41,151 nt of DNA from Octopus bimaculoides (taxonomy: Eukaryota). The position numbers were made by a program, and so were the translations under genes. Every line of letters starts with the position of its first letter. Position 1 is the stretch's first letter. Positions 17,961 to 40,282 of the stretch are shown here, piece by piece. The notes under the pieces were generated by a model that searched no databases, had not been told where the DNA came from, and saw only the letters and a program-made list of their open reading frames with translations. The stretch is taken from assembly GCF_001194135.2 (NCBI RefSeq), contig NC_069008.1, positions 2,765,959 through 2,807,109 of the forward strand, read 5' to 3'.

Positions 17961-18728
17961 ATCACTTTAGCTTTATCATTATTATTGTTATTTTTAACTT
18001 ATTTGTCAAAGTTCTTTCGTCACAGATACTGTGACCTCTTCAGTGACTCTCTCTGCCACGTGTCTCCTCTTGTCCTGTTTATCCTCTTTTGTCCTTCTGC
18101 GGAATGTATTCTATCTGCGCATGTGGTCATGTCTGTAGCTGTGTGTGTGTGTGTATGAGTTTAGTATGTGCGTCCTGTATGTGTGTGTGTGTATGTGGTT
18201 AGTATGCTCACATATGTGTATGCGTGTGTGTGTGTGTATGGGTTTGTATATTATACTGTACATTCTAATAATTTAATAAGTCCCACGGTGCTCAATGTAA
18301 CCTCTGTGCCTAATACATTGTACCTTTCACAACCCAGTAGACTGTACCAAACACAGGGTACCCTAAAAACTGTATATGTCCTGAAGCGCTGTATGCAACA
18401 TCTGTGCCTAATGCATGGTACCTAGGTACAAGTCAGCAGACTGCCAAACACAGGGTACTCTATTTAAGCAGCCAGATGGATTAACTGTAGGAACTCAGAA
18501 TAATTTCTGAAACTATGATTGATAAAGATAATTATTAAAAATCTACCCACCCTCCCATTTATACCCAACCCCGCACCTCTCACTTCTAGTCTCCACACCG
18601 GACGCCCTGTCTTCGCATCACCTCCATCACCACCACATCCATATAAGTGCGATCCCCTCCTTCATGTAGAACGGAGTCGTACTTTAATACCCGCTACACC
18701 ACCCCCACGTCGTTATCGGAAATTTTGA

Positions 18729-18815
18729 CGTTTGTTCTTCTGGTGGGGGGGAGCATCATCTTGTGCGCCGAGACCCTGTTGGGTTTTATCGGCGCCCATT
18801 CATATAGAACAAACG
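18729..18815 (-). promoter_or_regulatory. SECIS element (type 2) in the SELENOP 3' UTR
   Basis: Minus strand: CGTTTGTTCT-AT-ATGA-A-TGGGCGCCGA-T-AAA-ACCC-AACA-GGGT-C-TCGGCGCACA-A-GA-TGATG...AGAACAAACG. AUGA/GA core at 18803-18800 and 18760-18759, helix II 9/10 paired, unpaired AAA, 4-bp apical ministem, 10-bp possible helix I. Confidence 0.9.
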
Positions 18816-20045
18816 GTGGGGGGGGAACTTCCTGATAACAGACGTAGCGTTGGTGGGGGGTAGCAGATGGATAGCCGTGGTGGTGACGAGGGTGATGATA
18901 GCGGAGGAGAAGGGAGAGGTAGAAAATGNNNNNNNNNNNNNNNNNNNNNNNNNNNNNNNNNNNNNNNNNNNNNNNNNNNNNNNNNNNNNNNNNNNNNNNN
19001 NNNNNNNNNNNNNNNNNNNNNNNNNNNNNNNNNNNNNNNNNNNNNNNNNNNNNNNNNNNNNNNNNNNNNNNNNNNNNNNNNNNNNNNNNNNNNNNNNNNN
19101 NNNNNNNNNNNNNNNNNNNNNNNNNNNNNNNNNNNNNNNNNNNNNNNNNNNNNNNNNNNNNNNNNNNNNNNNNNNNNNNNNNNNNNNNNNNNNNNNNNNN
19201 NNNNNNNNNNNNNNNNNNNNNNNNNNNNNNNNNNNNNNNNNNNNNNNNNNNNNNNNNNNNNNNNNNNNNNNNNNNNNNNNNNNNNNNNNNNNNNNNNNNN
19301 NNNNNNNNNNNNNNNNNNNNNNNNNNNNNNNNNNNNNNNNNNNNNNNNNNNNNNNNNNNNNNNNNNNNNNNNNNNNNNNNNNNNNNNNNNNNNNNNNNNN
19401 NNNNNNNNNNNNNNNNNNNNNNNNNNNNNNNNNNNNNNNNNNNNNNNNNNNNNNNNNNNNNNNNNNNNNNNNNNNNNNNNNNNNNNNNNNNNNNNNNNNN
19501 NNNNNNNNNNNNNNNNNNNNNNNNNNNNNNNNNNNNNNNNNNNNNNNNNNNNNNNNNNNNNNNNNNNNNNNNNNNNNNNNNNNNNNNNNNNNNNNNTAGA
19601 TATATATATATATATAGATATATATATACATATATATATATATATTTAAAGAAGATAAGAAAATAGAGAGATAAATGAATAAATAATTATCTATTAATTG
19701 TCTCTCTATTTTCGTATCTTCTTCAAATATATATAAAACCACGGTTTATCTAGTTACCTTGCAGGTGAATATTAATTATAACATTCAACACTTCTTGAAT
19801 AGGTAACTCACTAGTATTTTCATTGGATTTTGTCATCCCTTAAAGAGGTTTGTAACCTTTATTTGAACTTCTATATACATATATATATTTAATCAACTAG
19901 GTCTACTATATATTATGCATTCGTTATCATATACAGTATTCTGTACATCTACGGAATCATGGGTGATTTGTGAACAACAACAACAACAACACCAACAACA
20001 GTAGCATCAATCAGTGCAACCTTGTGCAACCTTTTCAGGAAGCGT

Positions 20046-22672
20046 CTAATCTTCGCTCATATTCGGGATGTTACTGAAGACATATTCAAAGAATTTCTGA
20101 ATCTTGCGAGCCAGCGCCTTATGTTCATTTCTCTTCCGGTCAGCAGGAGCTGGTTTTTGGCATAGCAACCTTCATCATTGCCAGGATATTGGTCAGAAGT
20201 GAGCTGGAGTTGTTCCGACTGTTGATTCCTCTAGCGCTGGTCATTGTCAGATGGTGGACCCAATGGGTGGTCAGGAAGAAGGCGTGACTGAACAGAAGGG
20301 TGGTCAGCTGGTCAGGTCTTTCTTGTTGTCTGAATCTCGCTGCTGATTGTGACTGGTGGAATTGGTCTGGAGTTGTCATAGTCATGGTCAGTCGGACATA
20401 GTGGCCACATGGACCTTTGCAGCCTGACCAACTTCTTTACCTCACTGCCATCCCGCGGACAGTCTGTGTCATTGTCAACTGGTCATCTTGACCTCCCCAT
20501 TCTGACCAACTCCCTTGGGTCATTGTCACACTGCCATACTAGGTCATTGTCAACTGGTCACCTTCACCTCTCCATTCTGACCAACTTCCTTGGATCATTG
20601 TCACACTGCCATACTAGGTCATTGTCAACTGGTCACCTTCACCTCTCCATTCTGACCAGCTCCCTTGGATCATTGTCACACTGNNNNNNNNNNTCACCTC
20701 TCCATTCTGACCAGCTCCCTTGGATCATTGTCACACTGCCATACTAGGTCATTGTCAACTGGTCATCTTGACCTCTCCATTCTGACCAGCTCCCTTGGAT
20801 CATTGTCACATGGTAACACTAGACCACTGTCAGCTTGTTGAATTGACCTTTCCTGCTTCGTCCACACCCTTAAGTCACTGTCATGCCACACCATTAGGTG
20901 TCTGTCAACTGGACAGCTCAGGCAATCCAGTCATGTCTGTTCCATTGGGTCACTGTCAGGTGGAAAGCGTCAGTCGACAGCGACGTATGTTACTGTAGCC
21001 CAAATTCTGTGAGGTTCAGAAATGAGTGGAGTTGCTGCAATTATTGGCTGTGGGTATATTGAGAACCTCTGATGTCACATTGGTCAGGCTGGTGTTGAGG
21101 AGCTCGGGTCAACATCACGTGACTCTACACTTAGTCACGTTGTTATTGCTGCTGCTGATGTTGCTGCATAGCGGCATCAGTGACAACGTTGAGCTGATTT
21201 CGTATTCCGTCTGAGATTGGTCCTTGGCACCATCTTCGTCGCAGTTTTTGTTGTTGTCGGTAGAGGCTGTGTAAGTAACATTGTTGCCATTAGAAGTGGT
21301 GGTGGATGCTGTGATGTTTCTGGTAATGTTGCTGCCGTTGTTTGCAGATGTCATGTTCTTACAGCCATCAAAATCATTGTTGTTGGTGGCGGTGGTAGTG
21401 GTGGTAGCAATAGGTGTAGCCTCGCCTTTGTCACCCTTGATGACAATGTTATTGTTATTGCGATACTGTTGCTGCTGCTGGTTGCTGGAAGACGCTGCAA
21501 TGACATCAGGTAGCTGTGCACCGGTTTCATTTCTGCATACGCAGTACATATGTTTGTAGACTGAATGCAACAAAGCACGGAGTTTACAGTTACACGGCAC
21601 CGGGAGACTTAGTACAACAGTTTCATCTCCATCAAATAACACAGGATCTGTTGTTGTTATCGGTTTTTTTTCCAACGTGTTATTCTTGTTTTTGGCAGCA
21701 GTGCTGGTACCAATATTCTTCACAGTGGCCGCGTCAACATCTGTCTTAGTGTGGTTGCGGTGACGGACACCGCTTTGGACAGTGTCTCGGAGACGGTCGT
21801 CGTGGTCTTGGATGCGATGGTTACGGTTGAGCTGACCGAGAGCTGGGGCCCGGTGGAGAAGGAAGCGACACTGTCACGTCTGAATGATTTTGTAGCGGTC
21901 CTGCTGCAGCTGTGGTGGACATTGGCAAAACGAGTCTGATGCTGTCTTTTGCTGCTGCTTCCGCTGAAGCTTCCCCTCCACTCCCTTCTCCTCTTCTTCA
22001 CCTTGTTGATGATGAGACGGAGGATAATGTTGATGGCGATGAGAATGATGCGGGTAATTGCTGTTATGATGCAACTGTTGTTGCTGATAGTGTCGATGAG
22101 GATCATTATTATTATTGTTATTATTATGAGGATGTTGATTGACGTGCTGGGAGATGTGCTGGCCATGCTGTTGATGATGAGGCGAATGTCGGTTGCCTTT
22201 GCCGTGGCTGCCCTTTCTCCGAGTTTTCTGTTCGGTGTGACAGGAACCAGTGTTGTTACCAGGCATGAAATAACACACCAGCTTCTTGAATGGCTTAACA
22301 GAATGAGACGTCGATGATGATGACGATGACGATGACGACAATGTTGATGAGAAAGAAGAAGAACCAACGGAAGCAGAAAACGGAAACAGTAGCGTATGAT
22401 GCTTGATGAGCCAGTTACTCAAGGTGGACGTTTTTGGATTGTACCTGTACACGTATTTCTTTTGCGGTTTCTTCTTTGGCAGTGACATTGCCGACACCGT
22501 GTACATGCGCCGCACTCAAGCACGGAATTTCGATGTCTGCTGGTAGTTGAATAGGTTGCCTAGCATGCAGTTGCACAAGTTGAAGTAGTACGACATGCAG
22601 ATACCTTTGTGGACGTTGAGCGTGGAAACGGGAGCCTGCGATTGGTTGAAGCGAAACGTCTGACGACCGCAC
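20046..22672 (-). CDS. SELENOP: Selenoprotein P, last coding exon (40 in-frame TGA read as Sec; terminal TAG at 20048-20046)
   Basis: Acceptor ttttacctttacgcag|G TGC GGT. (R)CGRQTFRFNQSQAPVSTLNVHKGICMSYYFNLCNC aligns with vertebrate RCGRLVYHLGLPFSFLTFPYVEEAIKIAYCEKKCGNC. No TAA/TAG in about 875 codons; His-rich region; UQU/UQUPS repeats. The frame shifts across the 10-N gap at 20684-20693, so the gap length is treated as arbitrary. Confidence 0.93.
20470..20812 (-). repeat. 75-bp coding tandem repeat (25 aa, 4 Sec per unit) inside SELENOP
   Basis: Unit TGACAATGACCTAGTATGGCAGTGTGACAATGATCCAAGGRAGYTGGTCAGAATGGAGAGGTSAAGRTGACCAGT = UQUPSMAVUQUSK(G/E)(A/V)GQNGEVK(V/M)TS; about 4.5 visible copies, interrupted by a 10-N gap. 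Confidence 0.92.
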
Positions 22673-22799
22673 CTGCGTAAAGGTAAAAGTGGCGCTAAGT
22701 AGTGCGAGAAATGATAAGAATTGTAGTGCTAGAGGTAGCGACGATAATGGTAACAACAACAACAACAAAAACAAAAATCACAAGGCCTAAAATTTGGAG

Positions 22800-22979
22800 G
22801 AAGAGATTAAGTCGATTACATCGACTGCAGTACATAACTGGTATTTATTTAATCGACCCCCGAAAGGATGAAAGGCAAAGTCGACCTCGGCGGAATTTGA
22901 TCTCAGAATGCAGCGACGGGGGTAAATACTGCTAAGTATTTCGTCCGGTGTGCTAACAATTCTGCCGGCTCGCCACCTT

Positions 22980-22980
<1 letters not shown>
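22800..22980 (-). mobile_element. tRNA-derived SINE in a SELENOP intron
   Basis: Nearly identical to 40890-41060 (AATCGACCCCGAAAGGATGAAAGGCAAAGTCGACCTCGGCGGAATTTGA). Confidence 0.8.
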
Positions 22981-23049
<69 letters not shown>

Positions 23050-23475
23050 GTAATAATAATAATAATAATAATAATAGTAATATTCATAATAAATAATAAT
23101 AATAATAATAATAATNNNNNNNNNNNNNNNNNNNNNNNNNNNNNNNNNNNNNNNNNNNNNNNNNNNNNNNNNNNNNNNNNNNNNNNNNNNNNNNNNNNNN
23201 NNNNNNNNNNNNNNNNNNNNNNNNNNNNNNNNNNNNNNNNNNNNNNNNNNNNNNNNNNNNAAGCATCATAGCCATGTGTTGAGAGGAATTCTTTGGGGTT
23301 TGAATAATTCACCTTTGGAAACATGGGTGTTTCGTTCGACATCCTTAAACAAACCTTATTCAGGGACTTTTTGAGCAGGATGGGCTACTCAACCTGAAGA
23401 AAATTCTAACTGGGCCCCACATGCAAGTTCATGCGCAGAAACAAGGTAAAAGAGGAAAGATAAAAAGTAAATTAC

Positions 23476-23676
23476 CTATCGTAGAGGATGATGTCATTGT
23501 TGGAGCCTCGTAACTTCTTCCATATCCTCCGATGTAGAGAATCTTGGTAGACAGGGATACTTGTCTCCCTTCTCAGCTGATGAAGTTTACGTTTTGCTGA
23601 TGGGAAGAAAGAATTGACGATGCGGAACTTGACAAACTCCCGATTGGTTTGCAGCATGTGATGTATCTTCTCCAGC
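23476..23676 (-). CDS. SELENOP: Selenoprotein P, internal exon of the thioredoxin-like domain (201 bp, phase 2/2)
   Basis: ttccattacaccag|G...GAT AG|gtaatt. LEKIHHMLQTNREFVKFRIVNSFFPSAKRKLHQLRRETSIPVYQDSLHRRIWKKLRGSNNDIILYDR aligns with vertebrate LEDLRVKL..IVVN..HIPVYQQ..VWTLLNGSKDDFLIYDR. Confidence 0.93.
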
Positions 23677-24094
23677 CTGGTGTAATGGAACATTGGCCAA
23701 GGGTTAACAATAAATATTTTAGATATCTATCTGGGTGTATATAGTGCGTGCGTGTAACCACACATACACACACACACACACACGCACACACACACACACA
23801 CACATGCTCACATGTATGTAGAAATAATATTCTTCACCACATCAATATCGCTTTTCTGTAGGAATTAACGTTACTATCGTTTCTAAACCCAGGGCACACA
23901 TACACACATCATAAGAATTCATATACTTCAAGAAAACATGAAAATAATTTGTTTTAGCATGGAGGATCTTGAAGCAGACAAAGCTACAAATAATGTTTTC
24001 TTATGACACAATATTTGCATATATTAGGTTAACTTCTGTTGGAAACTAAGCAACAACAACAACAGCAACAATAATACAATCAAGGTTTACTCAC

Positions 24095-24346
24095 TCAACG
24101 ATGTTCTTTAATCATGGTTTTCAGTTTGCACTGAAGAGGCCAACGACAGTCGGGTGACCTGCAGTGTTGGCCATAGGATTAGCTAGCGCCCCATTGCTCC
24201 AGTTGGGCATGACTTTGCAGTTGCCATTACCCCGGTTCAGCCTTGCCGGTGACACGCCTGTCACGACGACAAGCAAGGCGAGAGTCAGTGTGATGGCCAC
24301 ATTTGAGATGGCTCCTCCTCCACCTCCTCCTCCTCCTCCTCCTCCT
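24095..24346 (-). CDS. SELENOP: Selenoprotein P, first visible coding exon (signal peptide and UxxU motif); start codon hidden in gap 24347-25119
   Basis: G11-AISNVAITLTLALLVVVTGVSPARLNRGNGNCKVMPNWSNGALANPMANTAGHPTVVGLFSAN-U-KP-U-LKNIVE, donor GA|gtgagt. Aligns with human CKQPPAWSIRDQDPMLNSNGSVTVVALLQAS-U-YL-C-ILQASK. TGA at 24123-24121 and 24114-24112. Confidence 0.92.
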
Positions 24347-25119
24347 NNNNNNNNNNNNNNNNNNNNNNNNNNNNNNNNNNNNNNNNNNNNNNNNNNNNNN
24401 NNNNNNNNNNNNNNNNNNNNNNNNNNNNNNNNNNNNNNNNNNNNNNNNNNNNNNNNNNNNNNNNNNNNNNNNNNNNNNNNNNNNNNNNNNNNNNNNNNNN
24501 NNNNNNNNNNNNNNNNNNNNNNNNNNNNNNNNNNNNNNNNNNNNNNNNNNNNNNNNNNNNNNNNNNNNNNNNNNNNNNNNNNNNNNNNNNNNNNNNNNNN
24601 NNNNNNNNNNNNNNNNNNNNNNNNNNNNNNNNNNNNNNNNNNNNNNNNNNNNNNNNNNNNNNNNNNNNNNNNNNNNNNNNNNNNNNNNNNNNNNNNNNNN
24701 NNNNNNNNNNNNNNNNNNNNNNNNNNNNNNNNNNNNNNNNNNNNNNNNNNNNNNNNNNNNNNNNNNNNNNNNNNNNNNNNNNNNNNNNNNNNNNNNNNNN
24801 NNNNNNNNNNNNNNNNNNNNNNNNNNNNNNNNNNNNNNNNNNNNNNNNNNNNNNNNNNNNNNNNNNNNNNNNNNNNNNNNNNNNNNNNNNNNNNNNNNNN
24901 NNNNNNNNNNNNNNNNNNNNNNNNNNNNNNNNNNNNNNNNNNNNNNNNNNNNNNNNNNNNNNNNNNNNNNNNNNNNNNNNNNNNNNNNNNNNNNNNNNNN
25001 NNNNNNNNNNNNNNNNNNNNNNNNNNNNNNNNNNNNNNNNNNNNNNNNNNNNNNNNNNNNNNNNNNNNNNNNNNNNNNNNNNNNNNNNNNNNNNNNNNNN
25101 NNNNNNNNNNNNNNNNNNN

Positions 25120-27867: not shown

Positions 27868-28094
27868 TCTTAACCACTATGCCATATGTCTGTGGGCATA
27901 AGGCTGGAGGGTATATCAGCCGAAACGTTGTGTTAACAACAAACAAGATGAGGACAAATATCCGTCAAATGTAAATAATGTAAATAATGTAAATAATGTA
28001 CATAATTCCTCATCTCTTAAATATAGAATCATGAAGGTTAGTTTTATTTTTGGTAGTAGGGTAGAAAGGGCACACTGAGTAATAGAAGTCAGCT

Positions 28095-28700
28095 TGTTAG
28101 GGGTCACTTTACTATAGCAGATTGAAAAGGGCACAGTAAATATCACGTTGTTAGGGGTCACTTTACTATAGCAGATTGAAAAGGGCACAGTAAATATCAC
28201 GTTGTTAGGGGTCACTTTACTATAGCAGATTGAAAAGGGCACAGTAAATATCACGTNNNNNNNNNNNNNNNNNNNNNNNNNNNNNNNNNNNNNNNNNNNN
28301 NNNNNNNNNNNNNNNNNNNNNNNNNNNNNNNNNNNNNNNNNNNNNNNNNNNNNNNNNNNNNNNNNNNNNNNNNNNNNNNNNNNNNNNNNNNNNNNNNNNN
28401 NNNNNNNNNNNNNNNNNNNNNNNNNNNNNNNNNNNNNNNNNNNNNNNNNNNNNNNNNNNNNNNNNNNNNNNNNNNNNNNNNNNNNNNNNNNNNNNNNNNN
28501 NNNNNNNNNNNNNNNNNNNNNNNNNNNNNNNNNNNNNNNNNNNNNNNNNNNNNNNNNNNNNNNNNNNNNNNNNNNNNNNNNNNNNNNNCACTTTACTATA
28601 GCAGATTGAAAAGGGCACAGTAAATATCACGTTGTTAGGGGTCACTTTACTATAGCAGATTGAAAAGGGCACAGTAAATATCAGGTTGTTAGGGGTTACT
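28095..28700. repeat. 54-bp tandem minisatellite spanning a gap
   Basis: Unit TTGTTAGGGGTCACTTTACTATAGCAGATTGAAAAGGGCACAGTAAATATCACG present on both sides of gap 28257-28588. Confidence 0.92.
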
Positions 28701-28739
28701 TTAGTATAGGAGTTACTTTGTTAGGGGTGGGTGGGGGTG

Positions 28740-30091: not shown

Positions 30092-30745
30092 TAGTGAGAG
30101 AGTAGTGCACGCCATCAAAGTGACACTGAAGTAAATTATACGAAGCCAAGTATACTCGTCTGATAAGGGTACACCAGGCACATGCATCACAACCATATGT
30201 GCACAACATGGTGATCTCATATCAAGATAAACTGCTCATGAACTTGCAGGTGGGGCCCAGTTAGAATTTTCTTCGGGTCGAGTAGCCCATCCCGCTCAAA
30301 GGGTCCCTGAATAAGGTTTGTTTAAGGATGTTGAAGAAAACACCCGTGTTTCCAAAGGTGAATTATTCAAACCCCAAAGAATTCCTCTCGACACATGGCT
30401 ATGATGCTCCCCCGCCACTACTTCTGCTCATGATCAGAGATGCACATATTGTCATCCACCAAGAGACATGCTCAACTGGTTAAGGCCAAACAACTGACAA
30501 GCAAATCTGTGGTATTAAGCAGAATATTTGCTGTAGCCCATCTTTTTATTCAAAGANNNNNNNNNNTAAGCAGAATATTTGCTGTAGCCCATCTTTTTAT
30601 TCAAAGACAAAACAATGTACATGATAACACTTCCAATCAATTAAGATCAGAAGCTATGAGAGCCACTTCCTGATGCTGCATCAGAGATCTCACCTCCACC
30701 ACTGCTTGACAACTGATGTTAGTGTATTCATGTCCCCATAACATA

Positions 30746-30907
30746 GCAGGAGTTGCTGTGTGGTAAGTAGCTTGCTTACCAGCCACATGGTTCCGGGTTC
30801 ATTCCCACTGCATGGCACCTTGGGGAAGTGTCTTCAACTATAGCCTCGGGCCGACCAAAGCCTTGTGAGTTGATTTGATAGACGGAAACTGAAAGAAGCC
30901 CACCATA

Positions 30908-31729: not shown

Positions 31730-32560
31730 AGTGTGTCACAGCTGTGACACTGTAACACAAATGGTGTATTCAGCTGTGACTGTAGCAATCACAAGATACA
31801 GTCTCAGTGCTGCAATGACACACGCAGTGTTACAGCTGTATCAGCAGTGACAACAAGTTACTGTGCTGCTATGACAGTGTGACAGAAGTCTTGTCACAAC
31901 TGTAACAGCAGTGACAACATGTTACTGTGCAGCTTTGTCAGTGAGACAGAAGCCCTGTGTCACAACTGTGACAGCAATGACAAGTTACTGTGCTGCTGTG
32001 ACAGAGTGACAAGGGTTTCGTTGCAACTGTGACAGCATTGATAACAAGTTACTGTGTGGCTGCAACAGTGTAAGAAAAGCGCTGTGTCACAACTGTAACA
32101 GCAGTGACAAGATGCAATAAATGTGCTACTGTGACAGCGAGATGCTGTTGATCTATCACAGTTGTAACAGCAGTGACAAAAGAGTTATTGTGTTCTGCTG
32201 CTGCTGTGACAATGTAACTGTGACAGACACAGATGTTGTGTCACAACTGTAACAGTAGTGATAACAAAATGCATTTGACATGCTGCTGCTGCTACTGCTA
32301 TGACAGTTGTGACACAAGTTCTGTGTCGCAACTATAATAGCAGCAGAAACACTGTGACACACTGTGCCACATGGCTGTGATAGTGTGCCTGTGACACAGT
32401 TATTGTATCACAACTATAATGGAAGTGACAATGAGATATAGTTACGATGCAGCTGCGACTGTTGTGGCACTGTGACACAGGTTTAGTATCACAACTGTGA
32501 CAGCATGATGCAGATGTGACAGGTGGATATAAGAGTGACACAAACGTCACTGTGACAAAG
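31730..32560. repeat. Degenerate intronic minisatellite (TGTCACAACTGTRACAGCAGTGACAA-like)
   Basis: More than ten diverged copies of GTGACA/TGTCAC-containing units about 50-60 bp apart. Confidence 0.75.
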
Positions 32561-33169: not shown

Positions 33170-33360
33170 ATGAGGATAGCTGTGTGAAAAATTGCCACAC
33201 TCTAGCAGTTAAGGGAACCTGTGGAAGAGGTAGGCCCAGGAAAACCTGGGAAGAGGTGGTGAGGCACGACCTTCAAACATTGGGCCTCACCGAGGCGATG
33301 ACTTCTGACTGAGACCTTTGGAAATATGCTGTGTGTGAGAAGACCCGGCAAGCCAAGTGA
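33170..33360 (+). mobile_element. RTE-clade LINE 3' end; probable 3' UTR continues to about 33768
   Basis: EDSCVKNCHTLAVKGTCGRGRPRKTWEEVVRHDLQTLGLTEAMTSD*DLWKYAV..KTRQAK* is a typical RTE C-terminus (G.R.RGRP...W...V..DL....D...W). Confidence 0.8.
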
Positions 33361-34799
33361 GACCTAAATCCAAGGCCTTTGCCAGGGGTGTAGCCAGCCC
33401 ACTTATGCGTATTAGACACTAAACTTCACTTGCGAAGACCTGTTGAGGCAAGGGAAATCGAAATCGAACTAAATTCGACAACTGGCACACATGCCAATGT
33501 CGTCTTCTTCATTGGACACGAAACTCGGCTTGCGAAGACCTGTTGAGGCAGGTGAAGTCGAAATCGTAATGGCATCTGTGCCCAGCGTCGCCTTCCTGGC
33601 ACTTGTGCCAGTGGCACATGTAAAGACATTCAAGCGAGATCATTGCCAGTGCTGCTGGATTGGCTCCTGTGCATGTGGCACGTAAAATACAACATTTTGA
33701 GCATAGCCGTTGCCAGTACCGTCTGACTGGCCTTCGTGCCGGTGGCACGTAAAAGCACCCACTACACTNNNNNNNNNNNNNNNNNNNNNNNNNNNNNNNN
33801 NNNNNNNNNNNNNNNNNNNNNNNNNNNNNNNNNNNNNNNNNNNNNNNNNNNNNNNNNNNNNNNNNNNNNNNNNNNNNNNNNNNNNNNNNNNNNNNNNNNN
33901 NNNNNNNNNNNNNNNNNNNNNNNNNNNNNNNNNNNNNNNNNNNNNNNNNNNNNNNNNNNNNNNNNNNNNNNNNNNNNNNNNNNNNNNNNNNNNNNNNNNN
34001 NNNNNNNNNNNNNNNNNNNNNNNNNNNNNNNNNNNNNNNNNNNNNNNNNNNNNNNNNNNNNNNNNNNNNNNNNNNNNNNNNNNNNNNNNNNNNNNNNNNN
34101 NNNNNNNNNNNNNNNNNNNNNNNNNNNNNNNNNNNNNNNNNNNNNNNNNNNNNNNNNNNNNNNNNNNNNNNNNNNNNNNNNNNNNNNNNNNNNNNNNNNN
34201 NNNNNNNNNNNNNNNNNNNNNNNNNNNNNNNNNNNNNNNNNNNNNNNNNNNNNNNNNNNNNNNNNNNNNNNNNNNNNNNNNNNNNNNNNNNNNNNNNNNN
34301 NNNNNNNNNNNNNNNNNNNNNNNNNNTTAGTACTTAATCTATCGGTCTCTTTTTGCCGAACCGCTAAGTTACGGGGACGTAAACACACCAGCATCGGTTG
34401 TCAAGCGATGTTGGGGAGACAAACACAGACACACACATATATATATATACATATACATATATACGACGTGTTTCTTTCAGTTTCCATCTACCAAATCCAC
34501 TCACAAGGCTTTGGTCAGCCCGAAGCTATAGTAGAAGACCCTTACCCAAGGTGCCACGCAGTGGGACTGAACCCGGAACCATGTGGTTCGTAAGCAAGCT
34601 ACTTACCACACAGCCACTCCTACGCCTGGACAGCTTTGAGTAAAAACAGTGCATGTATGTATGCATACATATCCATGTTGCTGTAAGTATGCACATAGCT
34701 GTGTATCATGTGCATTGCTCAATGTGTGGAGACAAGGAATGGGGTTAATGAGCTGAGAGAAATTTAGCTAATTGTTGCTTTAATTATGCAAATTACTGG

Positions 34800-36271
34800 A
34801 CAGTGAAAACTGTAGTGAAGAAGTGGCTCAAAGAACAGTCAACAGAATTTTACGGGGACAGGGATACATGCTCTCATTCTAAGGTGGAACATTGCTATTG
34901 AGAGAAACGGTGACTATGTTGAGAAGTAGGGATGTGATCCACAGAGGACCAGCTTCATTTTGATGTATGATACATGTTCCTATGTTGGTAATTATACCTG
35001 TCCTAAACAAAATGGCATTACCNNNNNNNNNNNNNNNNNNNNNNNNNNNNNNNNNNNNNNNNNNNNNNNNNNNNNNNNNNNNNNNNNNNNNNNNNNNNNN
35101 NNNNNNNNNNNNNNNNNNNNNNNNNNNNNNNNNNNNNNNNNNNNNNNNNNNNNNNNNNNNNNNNNNNNNNNNNNNNNNNNNNNNNNNNNNNNNNNNNNNN
35201 NNNNNNNNNNNNNNNNNNNNNNNNNNNNNNNNNNNNNNNNNNNNNNNNNNNNNNNNNNNNNNNNNNNNNNNNNNNNNNNNNNNNNNNNNNNNNNNNNNNN
35301 NNNNNNNNNNNNNNNNNNNNNNNNNNNNNNNNNNNNNNNNNNNNNNNNNNNNNNNNNNNNNNNNNNNNNNNNNNNNNNNNNNNNNNNNNNNNNNNNNNNN
35401 NNNNNNNNNNNNNNNNNNNNNNNNNNNNNNNNNNNNNNNNNNNNNNNNNNNNNNNNNNNNNNNNNNNNNNNNNNNNNNNNNNNNNNNNNNNNNNNNNNNN
35501 NNNNNNNNNNNNNNNNNNNNNNNNNNNNNNNNNNNNNNNNNNNNNNNNNNNNNNNNNNNNNNNNNNNNNNNNNNNNNNNNNNNNNNNNNNNNNNNNNNNN
35601 NNNNNNNNNNNNNNNNNNNNNNNNNNNNNNNNNNNNNNNNNNNNNNNNNNNNNNNNNNNNNNNNNNNNNNNNNNNNNNNNNNNNNNNNNNNNNNNNNNNN
35701 NNNNNNNNNNNNNNNNNNNNNNNNNNNNNNNNNNNNNNNNNNNNNNNNNNNNNNNNNNNNNNNNNNNNNNNNNNNNNNNNNNNNNNNNNNNNNNNNNNNN
35801 NNNNNNNNNNNNNNNNNNNNNNNNNNNNNNNNNNNNNNNNNNNNNNNNNNNNNNNNNNNNNNNNNCAGTGAAAACTGTAGTGAAGAAGTGGCTCAAAGAA
35901 CAGTCAACAGAATTTTACGGGGACAGGGATACATGCTCTCATTCTAAGGTGGAACATTGCTATTGAGAGAAACGGTGACTATGTTGAGAAGTAGGGATGT
36001 GATCCACAGAGGACCAGCTTCATTTTGATGTATGATACATGTTCCTGTGTTGGTAATTATCTCAAATAAGTCAAGGGAATTTTGCGGGGGCAGGGATACA
36101 TGCTCTCATTCGAAGGTGGAACATTGCTATTGAGAGACACGGTGGCTATGTTGAGAAGTAGGGATGTGATCCACAGAGGACCAGCTTCATTTTGATGTAT
36201 GATACATGTTCCTATGTTGGTAATTATACCTGTCCTAAACAAAATGGCATTACCTTTTGACTCAGCCTCGT
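34800..36271 (+). mobile_element. Mariner transposon 3' end, present three times (34801-35022, 35866-36058, 36075-36271), ending in a TIR
   Basis: VKTVVKKWLKEQSTEFY..GIHALI.RWNIAIERNGDYVEK* is a mariner C-terminus; terminal TTTTGACTCAGCCTCGT. Confidence 0.85.
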
Positions 36272-39036: not shown

Positions 39037-39891
39037 TCATCATCGTTTAACGTCCGTTGTCCACGCTGGTATGGGTTGGACGGTTTGACCAGGGCTGGCC
39101 AGCTGCAAGGCTGCCTCAGACTCCAGTCTGTTTATATATAAACATGCATGTGTTTTGGCATCTTTGTCTGTCCCCACCACCACCACCACCACCACCACCA
39201 CCATCTGACAACCAGTGTTGGTGTGTTTACATCCCCATAATTTAGTAGCTTGGCAAAAGAAGCAGATGGAATAAGTACAAGGCTGTAAGAAAAGAAAAAA
39301 AAGAAAGCAGTGAGGTTGATTTCTTCAACTAAAATTCTTGAGCATGGGGCACAGTCTGATTAATGGAAGGAAGGAAGGAAGGAAGGGGGGAGGGAGGGAG
39401 GAAGAAAGAAAGGCACACATGCATTCACAGTCATATATAAGGGCAGTAGAGTGTGATTTGAGGGAGATTTGACAGCTAGAAGCCTCCCTCATTGGCTCAT
39501 CCATACATAAGGCAATAGGGTGAAATTTGAGGAAAATTTGGCTGCTGTGTCTTTGAAGTTTAACCAATATGTAGAGGTTTCACTTGTTGGCTCATACATA
39601 AGGCAGGAGAGTTATGATTCGAGAGAGATTTGGCTGCTGTTTCTACTCTAGAGGTCTCCTTCATTGATTCATACACACATGAAACAATACTCTTTTACTT
39701 GTTTCAGCCATTTGACTGTGGCCATGCTGGGGCACCGCCTTTTAGCCGAGCAAATCGACGCCAGGACTTATTCTTTGTAAGCCTAGTACTTATGCTATCG
39801 GTCTCTTTTTGCCAAACCGCTAAGTTACATGGACGTAAACACACCACCATCGGTAGTCAAGCGATGTTGGGGGTCAAACACACAAACATAT

Positions 39892-39936
<45 letters not shown>

Positions 39937-40282
39937 TACAACAAGCTTCTTTCAGTTTCCGTCAACCAAATCCACTCACAAGACTTTGGTCAGCCCGAGG
40001 CTATAGTAGAAGGCACCTGCCCAAGGTGCCACGCAGTGGGACTGAACCCGGAACCATGTGGTTGGTAAGCAAGCTACTTACCACACAGCCACTCGGAGAG
40101 CAGGCTGCCGTTGCTACAATCATTTCTAGCCACTGTCTAGAGATCTCCATTACTGGCTGACACATACATATGTACTAGATAAGAGAGCAAGGTGTGATGT
40201 GAGGGAGGTTTGGCTGCTGTTTCTAGAGAATCTAGTATCCACATAGAGACTCCTTCTTTTGACCTCTTGGTGGGTAGTTAGT

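What the first reader, a model, noticed from the sequence alone, without database searches (positions are those of the whole stretch)
20470..20812. Sec content amplified by a recent 75-bp tandem repeat (4 Sec per 25 aa), possibly copy-number variable
Seen: about 4.5 near-identical units of UQUPSMAVUQUSKGxGQNGEVKxTS, flanked by more diverged UQU units. The assembly breaks inside the array (10 N, frame offset), so the true unit count and total Sec count are uncertain. The UQUPS motif resembles the human C-terminal UEUPSN. Inference: unequal crossing-over is tuning selenium-carrying capacity, and alleles may differ in steps of 4 Sec.
Basis: partly seen in the sequence, partly recalled or inferred. 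Interest (0 to 1): 0.7.

Follow-up and report, generated by a model that had tools for sequence, protein, structure and literature searches.

The report
Octopus selenoprotein P Sec-rich tandem repeat
This is the last exon of the Octopus bimaculoides selenoprotein P gene, where a 75-bp in-frame unit encoding four selenocysteines has been copied head-to-tail four (perhaps five) times; this follows the known way this protein gains selenium capacity, and whether copy number varies between animals is untested.

Summary
On the minus strand, 20832-20478 carries a 75-nt (25-codon) tandem unit, UQUPSMAVUQUSKGxGQNGEVKxTS, with 4 in-frame TGA per unit. Older, diverged units flank it.

It is the Sec-rich tail of Octopus bimaculoides SELENOP. 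The spliced N-terminus hits Pfam SelP_N at 83.9 bits. The 857-codon last exon has 38 TGA, 0 TAA and 1 TAG, the terminator.

The frame offset at the 10-N gap is an artefact. The flanks share an exact 45-nt overlap, and any true gap of 30+75k nt restores the frame. In 241 kb of the same scaffold, 10-N gaps often hide overlapping contig ends. So the two partial units at the gap are probably one unit: 4 units and 40 Sec in total (5 units and 44 Sec if 30 nt are missing).

Young units are 91-100% identical, with synonymous difference 0-0.19. Against the older neighbouring unit that figure is about 0.8-1.0. The copies are therefore recent or homogenised.

A single-copy SECIS candidate lies at 18815-18730. 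A second may sit in the 668-N gap.

Modular Sec-domain expansion in SELENOP is published, so this is a new example of a known kind. Copy-number polymorphism and adaptive "tuning" could not be tested.

The parts
24095..24345 (-). SELENOP coding exon A, incomplete at its 5' end. It encodes a signal-peptide-like hydrophobic stretch and the start of the thioredoxin-like domain (...CKVMPNWSNG...GHPTVVGLFSANUKPULKNIVE). The donor is GA|GTGAGT. The start codon is not visible: a (GGA)n run and the N gap 24347-25119 lie just upstream.
   Evidence: The spliced model hits Pfam SelP_N at 83.9 bits, E 1.4e-23.
24112..24123 (-). Redox motif U-K-P-U, with TGA at 24123-24121 and at 24114-24112. Both positions of the CxxC-type motif are Sec (UxxU, not the usual UxxC).
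   Evidence: One search gives the coordinates. One search aligns NCKPCL (U written as C) onto the CKPC CxxC motif of the thioredoxin-like protein 2m72_A.
23476..23676 (-). SELENOP coding exon B (LEKIHHMLQTNREF...IPVYQDS...DIILYDR). The acceptor is CAG|G and the donor AG|GTAATT.
   Evidence: The whole-genome SelP_N scan hits C28:2789430-2789642(-), which is window 23472-23684. The 112-aa UniRef fragment P0002 is named 'Selenoprotein P N-terminal domain-containing protein', Octopus bimaculoides.
20046..22672 (-). Last coding exon: the end of the SelP_N domain, a His-rich region, an Asn/Thr-rich linker with many N-x-S/T sequons, the Sec-rich domain, and the TAG stop at 20048-20046.
   Evidence: In the k=-1 merge it has 857 codons with 38 TGA, 0 TAA and 1 TAG, the terminator. 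The SelP_N alignment runs into this exon.
22003..22188 (-). His-rich region, 19 His in 62 residues.
20049..21117 (-). Sec-rich C-terminal domain, from UCUPELL... to ...NMSED. It holds 36 Sec (k=-1) or 40 Sec (k=0).
   Evidence: From base composition, P(no TAA/TAG in 338 codons) = 5e-6.
20833..20958 (-). Older, diverged copies of the module: u-2 (UQUPNGTDMTGLPELSS) and u-1 (UQTPNGVAUQULKGVDEAGKVNSTS, 25 aa, 54-59% nt identity to the young units).
20478..20832 (-). Young 75-nt tandem array, units u1 to u5 as written in the assembly. Each full unit is UQUPSMAVUQUSKGxGQNGEVKxTS with 4 TGA. u1 has TGG in place of its second TGA.
   Evidence: The unit is unique in the genome.
20684..20693 (.). 10-N assembly gap inside the array. 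The flanks overlap exactly by 45 nt. The true gap is 30+75k nt, most likely k=-1, meaning no sequence is missing and u2 and u3 are one unit.
20391..20477 (-). Diverged 3' unit u6 (UQUHRLSAGWQUGKEVGQAAKVHVATMSD). It shares KEVGQ with u4 and has TGG where the young units have TGA.
18730..18815 (-). Candidate SECIS element of the form-2 type:
- helix I: CGUUUGUUCU / AGAACAAACG
- AUGA at 18803-18800
- helix II: UGGGCGCCGA / UCGGCGCACA
- an unpaired AAAA
- mini-stem: ACCC / GGGU
- 3' GA at 18760-18759
An ATTAAA follows at 18688.
   Evidence: It is the only hit of a SECIS-core pattern in the window on either strand; shuffles give 0.3 hits per 32 kb per strand. Constrained fold. Fold energy -30.1 kcal/mol, z = -4.34, 0 of 200 shuffles as stable. 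Single copy in the genome. Rfam does not call it.
18929..19596 (.). 668-N gap that begins 449 nt after the stop codon. It could hide the proximal SECIS.
   Evidence: This is an inference only.

Best explanation
The region is the selenocysteine-rich C-terminal part of the Octopus bimaculoides selenoprotein P (SELENOP) gene, on the minus strand.

Shown:
- The protein has a thioredoxin-like N-terminal domain with a UxxU redox motif, then a His-rich stretch, a probably glycosylated linker, and a tail in which UGA is read as selenocysteine.
- Within that tail, a 75-nt (25-codon) module carrying four UGA codons has been duplicated head-to-tail.
- The assembly supports four near-identical copies, or five if 30 nt are missing at the gap, next to older decayed copies of the same module.
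- The unit length is a multiple of three and the copies are in register. Each gain or loss therefore keeps the frame and changes the protein by 25 residues and 4 Sec.
- The frame offset across the 10-N gap is an artefact of an arbitrary gap length placed between two contig ends that overlap.

Inferred:
- The copies arose by replication slippage or unequal recombination, or are kept alike by gene conversion.
- The UGAs are decoded through SECIS element(s) in the 3'UTR. One candidate was found.
- The functional effect is more selenium carried per molecule.
For: Family:
- The spliced N-terminus hits SelP_N at 83.9 bits against a cut-off of 23.2.
- A genome-wide SelP_N hit falls on exon B.
- The UniRef fragment is named selenoprotein P, O. 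bimaculoides.
- The redox motif aligns to a CxxC motif.

Coding with UGA=Sec:
- The last exon has 38 TGA, 0 TAA and 1 terminal TAG in 857 codons. P(all 36 tail stops being TGA by composition) is 8e-19, an over-statement because the repeated units are not independent.
- TGA positions are kept in register among the units, with two TGA-to-TGG changes in the older copies.

Repeat:
- TRF period 75, 95% matches.
- Young units are 91-100% identical. pS among u2-u5 is 0-0.19, against 0.8-1.0 to u-1.
- The unit is unique in the genome.

Gap:
- Exactly 30 nt separate the two breakpoints in an intact unit, and the flanks overlap exactly by 45 nt.
- In 241 kb, 6 of 15 ten-N gaps have 38-97-nt exact flank overlaps. 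Five of these, all but the gap under study, lie in complex, non-repeat sequence. Of 86 longer gaps, only 7 overlap, all inside simple or tandem repeats.
- A 120-nt overlap would need 6 mismatches.

SECIS candidate.

[quoted passage not shown] Counts are 46 in oyster and 132 in a bivalve (PMC8230778).
Against: - No transcript, protein or second genome could be consulted, so translation of all UGAs is inferred.
- Rfam finds no SECIS in the window. Rfam also finds none above cut-off in the whole octopus genome, so this says little.
- The SECIS candidate has an unusually asymmetric internal loop, 2 nt against about 19 nt.
- The Sec-rich exon has no Pfam hit, SelP_C included.
- The start codon is missing.
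- The two upstream in-frame TGAs of the last exon (22518 and 21876) could instead be removed by unrecognised introns.
- The true copy number at the gap cannot be fixed without reads.
Confidence: 0.85

Rival explanations
1. The array is old and fixed in copy number. Its units look young only because gene conversion or concerted evolution keeps them alike, so there is no recent amplification and no polymorphism between individuals.
For: Variants are shared among the units in a mosaic. u1 and u5 share GTC AAG ATG. u3 and u4 share GTG AAG GTG. u4, u5 and the old u6 share GTT. Exchange between units would produce this pattern. The outer units are the more diverged ones, as in homogenised arrays.
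Against: The same mosaic can come from the order of duplications. Conversion and unequal exchange are linked processes, and arrays undergoing the one usually also change in length. No data from other individuals or species exist here to show fixity.
Confidence: 0.25
2. The near-identical units are mostly an assembly artefact: collapsed or duplicated contig ends around the gap. In that case no real tandem amplification exists.
For: Short-read assemblies break in such repeats. u2 and u3 are identical over their shared 45 nt and are probably one unit.
Against: The contig after the gap holds 2.9 contiguous copies on its own (u3-u4-u5), each marked by its own substitutions. The contig before the gap holds u1-u2. 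Merging the overlap still leaves 4 units. No second copy of the unit exists elsewhere in the genome.
Confidence: 0.03
3. The region is a non-coding minisatellite or a decayed pseudogene tail, and the in-frame TGAs are ordinary stops.
For: No Pfam hit to the Sec-rich exon. No homologue of the tail in 1.84 billion representative proteins. SECIS not confirmed by Rfam.
Against: The frame is open for 857 codons apart from TGA, with 0 TAA/TAG before the terminator. It is contiguous in frame with a SelP_N domain through canonical splice sites. The layout of a His-rich region followed by a Sec-rich tail matches SELENOP. A SECIS-like element lies downstream on the same strand. Gene predictors do not read through TGA, so the absence of such tails from protein databases is expected.
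Confidence: 0.02

Closest known systems
Molluscan selenoprotein P with many Sec (Pacific oyster, 46 UGA; a bivalve, 132 UGA; Baclaocos et al. 2019, as cited in PMC13134290 and PMC8230778)
   Same: The same gene family and architecture: an N-terminal thioredoxin-like domain with Sec, a His-rich region, and a long C-terminal tail with dozens of in-frame UGAs built from repeated modules. The octopus gene has 40-44 UGAs, close to the oyster count.
   Different: This is a cephalopod gene. The redox motif is UxxU, not UxxC. The youngest modules are still 91-100% identical at the DNA level, so the amplification is visible as a clean 75-bp tandem repeat. I could not read the 2019 paper, so I do not know whether the octopus gene or this repeat is described there.
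Lamprey SELENOP2 (139-162 in-frame UGAs, 'expanded modular C-terminal region', two SECIS; PMC13134290)
   Same: An independent example of Sec number growing by expansion of a modular C-terminal region. It uses the same argument: only UGA stops occur in frame.
   Different: It is a vertebrate paralogue with far more Sec, and its N-terminal motif is CxxU. Its two SECIS were found and the transcript was confirmed there; neither is confirmed here.
Human SELENOP (10 Sec; N-terminal UxxC; C-terminal ...KUEUPSN; PMC8230778)
   Same: The domain order is the same. The N-terminal motif context matches (VTVVALLQASUYLC against PTVVGLFSANUKPUL). The UxUPS motif of the octopus unit (UQUPS) resembles the human C-terminal UEUPS.
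   Different: Human has 9 C-terminal Sec and no recent tandem repeat. Pfam SelP_C does not match the octopus tail.
Coding minisatellites or VNTRs with in-frame units, such as DRD4 exon 3 (48 bp) and PER3 (54 bp). These examples are from general knowledge and were not tested here.
   Same: A head-to-tail repeat of tens of bp inside an exon, with unit length a multiple of 3 and few highly similar copies. Arrays of this kind often vary in copy number between individuals.
   Different: Polymorphism is not shown for the octopus array. Here each unit adds four recoded stop codons, so a length change would also change the recoding load and the selenium content.

Membership tests
Selenoprotein P (SELENOP) | N-terminal SelP_N (thioredoxin-like) domain | tested here: met
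   The spliced exons A+B+C hit Pfam PF04592 at 83.9 bits, E 1.4e-23, cut-off 23.2, model positions 4-164 of 234. A genome scan places a SelP_N hit on exon B. The UniRef name agrees.
Selenoprotein P (SELENOP) | Sec in the N-terminal redox motif (UxxC) | tested here: met
   The motif is U-K-P-U (TGA at 24123 and 24114). It aligns to the CKPC CxxC motif of the thioredoxin-like protein 2m72_A. It is a variant, with Sec at both positions.
Selenoprotein P (SELENOP) | His-rich region between the domains | tested here: met
   19 His in 62 residues, 22188-22003.
Selenoprotein P (SELENOP) | C-terminal domain with multiple in-frame UGA and no other stop codon | tested here: met
   36 TGA (k=-1), 0 TAA and only the terminal TAG in 339 codons. 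The whole exon has 38 TGA in 857 codons.
Selenoprotein P (SELENOP) | Sequence match to Pfam SelP_C | tested here: not met
   The Sec-rich exon has no Pfam family at E<=1. The tail is known to evolve fast (PMC13134290), so I take this as weak evidence against membership.
Selenoprotein P (SELENOP) | SECIS element(s) in the 3'UTR, typically two | tested here: inconclusive
   There is one candidate with the full SECIS layout at 18815-18730. It is the only pattern hit in the window, z = -4.34, single copy. Rfam SECIS_1 is negative, but it is also blind in the whole genome, with a best score of 26.6 bits. A 668-N gap lies between the stop codon and the candidate.
Selenoprotein P (SELENOP) | Secreted protein, with a signal peptide and start codon | tested here: inconclusive
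   The hydrophobic stretch VAITLTLALLVVVTGVSP is present, but no in-frame ATG is visible. An N gap lies at 24347-25119.
Selenoprotein P (SELENOP) | UGAs actually translated as Sec | not testable with these tools
   This needs 75Se labelling, mass spectrometry or ribosome profiling.
Coding minisatellite (VNTR) | Head-to-tail units of 10-100 bp with high identity | tested here: met
   TRF period 75, 95% matches. Unit identities are 91-100%.
Coding minisatellite (VNTR) | Unit length a multiple of 3, with the frame kept through the array | tested here: met
   75 nt = 25 codons. The frame is continuous once the gap is set to 30+75k nt.
Coding minisatellite (VNTR) | Copy number differs between individuals | not testable with these tools
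   Only one haplotype is available. There is no alternative haplotig in the assembly. Public records of this and nearby genomes are withheld or absent.

The most novel reading that the evidence does not exclude
The 75-bp array is a polymorphic coding VNTR. Under this reading, individual octopuses, or closely related Octopus species, carry SELENOP alleles that differ by whole units. They would then differ by 4 selenocysteines per step, about 10% of the protein's selenium load. That would be heritable variation in selenium transport capacity and in the number of UGA codons a ribosome must recode processively.
Probability: 0.3. Interest if true: 0.55.

Novelty: new member of a known kind. Interest (0 to 1): 0.3.

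Why it matters
SELENOP is the main example of processive stop-codon recoding. Its Sec number ranges from 1 to more than 160 across animals, and how that number changes is usually inferred from old, decayed modules. Here the last steps are still visible at the DNA level as a clean in-frame 75-bp repeat worth 4 Sec per step.

That gives a concrete locus at which to ask whether Sec number is polymorphic within a species. It also gives natural alleles for asking how recoding efficiency scales with UGA number.

There is a practical point as well. The public annotation reduces this gene of at least 1007 aa to a 112-aa fragment, and the assembly inserts a false frameshift and probably a duplicated half-unit.

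Tried and rejected
1. Independent sequences of the array. All of these failed:
- A word-based protein search with the 252-aa TGA-free segment found only the window's own ORF.
- An exact look-up of that ORF on public contigs found nothing.
- A search with the N-terminal domain found only the O. bimaculoides UniRef fragment.
- The whole last exon read as TGA=W, with words drawn from the Sec-rich part, gave 0 hits.
- An exhaustive phmmer run of the post-gap tail (TGA=W) against 1.84 billion representatives gave 0 hits.
- An exact-pattern scan of metagenome contigs for the unit core gave 0 hits.
So no comparison between species or individuals was possible.

2. SECIS by Rfam. There were five scans, at E-value or gathering thresholds, on the whole window and on short stretches. 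They returned only miRNA-like noise from simple repeats. The same model finds nothing above cut-off in the whole genome, so I rejected Rfam as a test here. My first hand-written pattern wrongly required helix I to abut the core and found nothing. A fold-based lenient scan gave only distant, unconvincing hits.

3. Literature. The key paper (Baclaocos et al. 2019, PMC6885538) and the octopus genome paper (looked up under a PMC id recalled from memory) are not held. I relied on later papers that summarise the former.

4. Intron after ...NVHK (a GT at 22608). I considered it and rejected it. No acceptor downstream keeps the frame, and the SelP_N alignment continues through that point.

5. k=-2, a 120-nt overlap of the gap flanks. 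I rejected it because it needs 6 mismatches.
Full report
**1. What is in the sequence**

The feature lies on the minus strand. TRF reports a period-75 array at 20468-20683 (2.9 copies, 95% matches) and a second at 20696-20853 (2.1 copies, 81%). The repeat finder gives start-to-start spacings of 75, 75, 55, 75, 75, where the 55 spans the gap.

Translated with TGA=U, the units read as follows:

| Unit | Coordinates | Sequence |
|---|---|---|
| u1 | 20832-20758 | UQWSSVTMUQUSKGAGQNGEVKMTS |
| u2 | 20757-20694 | UQUPSMAVUQUSKGAGQNGEV, cut by the gap |
| u3 | 20683-20628 | VUQUSKGAGQNGEVKVTS, begins at the gap |
| u4 | 20627-20553 | UQUPSMAVUQUSKEVGQNGEVKVTS |
| u5 | 20552-20478 | UQUPSMAVUQUPKGVGQNGEVKMTS |

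A full unit has 4 TGA in 25 codons. Older copies of the same module flank the array:
- u-2 (20958-20908).
- u-1 (20907-20833), UQTPNGVAUQULKGVDEAGKVNSTS, also 25 aa but only 54-59% identical in DNA.
- u6 (20477-20391), UQUHRLSAGWQUGKEVGQAAKVHVATMSD.

The 75-nt unit occurs nowhere else in the 2.34-Gb genome.

**2. The gap**

The coding sequence before the gap ends ...GGAGAGGTGA (20694). After the gap it resumes CAGTGTGACAATG... (20683). In the intact units u4 and u5, exactly 30 nt separate these two points. The true gap is therefore 30+75k nt. Writing it as 10 N shifts the frame by one, which is the whole of the 'frame offset'.

The last 45 nt before the gap are identical to the first 45 nt after it. 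So k=-1 is possible: no missing sequence, with u2 and u3 being one unit.

As a control I looked at the other gaps:
- The window's only other 10-N gap (30557-30566) has an exact 41-nt flank overlap in non-repetitive sequence.
- Over 241 kb of the same scaffold, 6 of 15 ten-N gaps have exact overlaps of 38-97 nt. Five of these, all but the gap under study, lie in complex, non-repeat sequence.
- Of 86 longer gaps, only 7 show any overlap, and all 7 lie inside simple or tandem repeats.

Ten N is evidently this assembly's floor for negative or very small gap estimates. Gaps of about 90-100 nt are written at their estimated size, so k>=1 is disfavoured. A 120-nt overlap (k=-2) would need 6 mismatches.

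Best estimate: 4 units (k=-1), possibly 5 (k=0). Either way the reading frame is continuous.

**3. What gene it is**

Upstream on the same strand I reconstructed two further exons with canonical splice sites:
- Exon A, 24345-24095: ...CKVMPNWSNG...GHPTVVGLFSANUKPULKNIVE, donor GA|GTGAGT.
- Exon B, 23676-23476: LEKIHH...IPVYQ...DIILYDR.
- The last exon, 22672-20046.

The evidence for the family is:
- The spliced N-terminus matches Pfam SelP_N at 83.9 bits (E 1.4e-23, cut-off 23.2).
- A whole-genome SelP_N scan independently lands on exon B.
- A 112-aa UniRef fragment identical to part of the model is named 'Selenoprotein P N-terminal domain-containing protein', Octopus bimaculoides. This also identifies the organism.
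- The best PDB match aligns N[U]KP[U]L onto the CKPC CxxC motif of a thioredoxin-like protein. The redox motif here is therefore UxxU.
- The last exon continues into a His-rich stretch (19 His of 62 residues, 22188-22003). A linker follows that holds most of the protein's 21 N-x-S/T sequons, and then the Sec-rich tail.

In the k=-1 merge the last exon has 857 codons with 38 TGA, no TAA and a single TAG, the terminator. Base composition alone predicts about 12 TAA/TAG in the 338-codon tail, giving P(0) = 5e-6.

The whole model is at least 1007 aa with 40 Sec (k=-1), or 44 Sec (k=0). The start codon is not visible: a (GGA)n run and an N gap lie just upstream.

**4. SECIS**

Rfam finds no SECIS in the window at any threshold. 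The same model also finds nothing above cut-off in the entire octopus genome, with a best score of 26.6 bits. That negative result is therefore uninformative.

I then searched for the SECIS core directly: AUGA, a helix II of at least 9 bp, AA 9-14 nt downstream, and a 3' GA. This pattern hits once in the whole window on both strands. The hit is on the minus strand at 18803-18758, just past the 668-N gap that begins 449 nt after the stop. Dinucleotide shuffles give 0.3 hits per 32 kb per strand.

With context the candidate shows the full layout:
- a perfect 10-bp helix I (CGUUUGUUCU / AGAACAAACG);
- the AUGA/GA quartet;
- helix II;
- an unpaired AAAA;
- a 4-bp mini-stem.

It folds at -30.1 kcal/mol with z = -4.34 (0 of 200 shuffles as stable), and it is single-copy in the genome. 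An ATTAAA lies 40 nt downstream. Its internal loop is unusually asymmetric, so I rate it a probable SECIS, not a proven one. A second SECIS may be hidden in the gap.

**5. Age and mode of the amplification**

- Among u2/3, u4 and u5, nucleotide identity is 91-100%. The synonymous proportion of differences is 0-0.19.
- Against the older unit u-1, synonymous sites are saturated (0.8-1.0).
- The similarity therefore does not come from protein constraint alone. The copies are recent or recently homogenised.
- No young unit has lost a TGA. The older copies show two TGA-to-TGG (Sec-to-Trp) changes, in u1 and u6, and one ACA in u-1.
- Variants are shared in a mosaic. u1 and u5 share GTC AAG ATG. u3 and u4 share GTG AAG GTG. 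u4, u5 and u6 share GTT. This fits either the order of duplications or exchange between units.
- One haplotype cannot separate slippage, unequal crossing-over and gene conversion.
- The young array contributes 15 of 40 Sec (k=-1) or 19 of 44 (k=0).

**6. Comparison with what is known**

[quoted passage not shown] 2019). Reported counts are 10 in human, 46 in oyster, 132 in a bivalve and 139-162 in lampreys.

The octopus gene fits this family and this mode of growth, so I class it as a new member of a known kind. I could not read the 2019 paper, so the gene may already be listed there.

The human C-terminal KUEUPSN is confirmed. The shared U-x-U-P-S is real but only five residues long.

**7. 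What remains open**

These are reasonable for a four-copy, 91-100% identical coding minisatellite, but nothing here tests them. Every route to other individuals or species failed. PCR or long reads across 20380-20960 in several animals would settle both the true unit number and the polymorphism.

Noticed in passing
window 24112-24123 (-): The N-terminal redox motif of this SELENOP is U-K-P-U, with Sec at both positions of the CxxC-type motif. The usual form is UxxC; a CxxU variant is reported for lamprey SELENOP2 in PMC13134290.
   Followed up: partly
window 20824-20826 (-) in u1, and the WQU of u6 (about 20448-20450): At positions where the young units have TGA (Sec), two older units have TGG (Trp). 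These are single-base Sec-to-Trp changes that keep the frame open. In an animal with heavy A-to-I editing, UGA-to-UGG recoding at the RNA level would be worth a look. That last point is speculation.
   Followed up: no
window 30557-30566, and 14 other 10-N gaps in C28:2665959-2907109: 10-N gaps in this assembly often sit between contig ends that overlap exactly by 38-97 nt. The overlapped sequence is then written twice, as a false short duplication. This could create false frameshifts or duplications in other genes.
   Followed up: yes
public annotation (UniRef fragment P0002, 112 aa) versus window 20046-24345: The public protein for this gene is a 112-aa piece lying between the second N-terminal TGA and the next TGA. 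The gene model of at least 1007 aa and 40-44 Sec is missing from the protein databases searched.
   Followed up: partly
window 28094-28256 and 28589-28709: A 54-bp tandem repeat with 95-100% identical copies on both sides of a 332-N gap, in what appears to be the upstream intergenic or intronic region. Its function is unknown.
   Followed up: no
window 35902-36227: A 167-bp unit present twice in tandem (94% identity). It reads like part of a dispersed element: related peptides recur at 34749-34991 and 35948-36223.
   Followed up: no
window about 33180-33393 (+); also 30418-30837, 34369-34643, 39787-40178: Fragments that look like interspersed repeats. One is a retroelement-tail-like peptide (GRGRPRKTWEEVVRHDLQTLGL). 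Another is a short element recurring on both strands (...PKVPRSGTEPGTMWLVSKLLTTQPL...).
   Followed up: no
window 31827-32111: A 64/127-bp tandem repeat rich in GTGACA/TGTCAC, 75-80% identical, lying several kb upstream of SELENOP exon A. It shows no sign of coding.
   Followed up: no
window 24312-24346 (-): A (GGA)n/(CTC)n triplet run lies directly 5' of the signal-peptide-like sequence and abuts a 773-N gap. The translation start and 5'UTR of the gene cannot be read.
   Followed up: no
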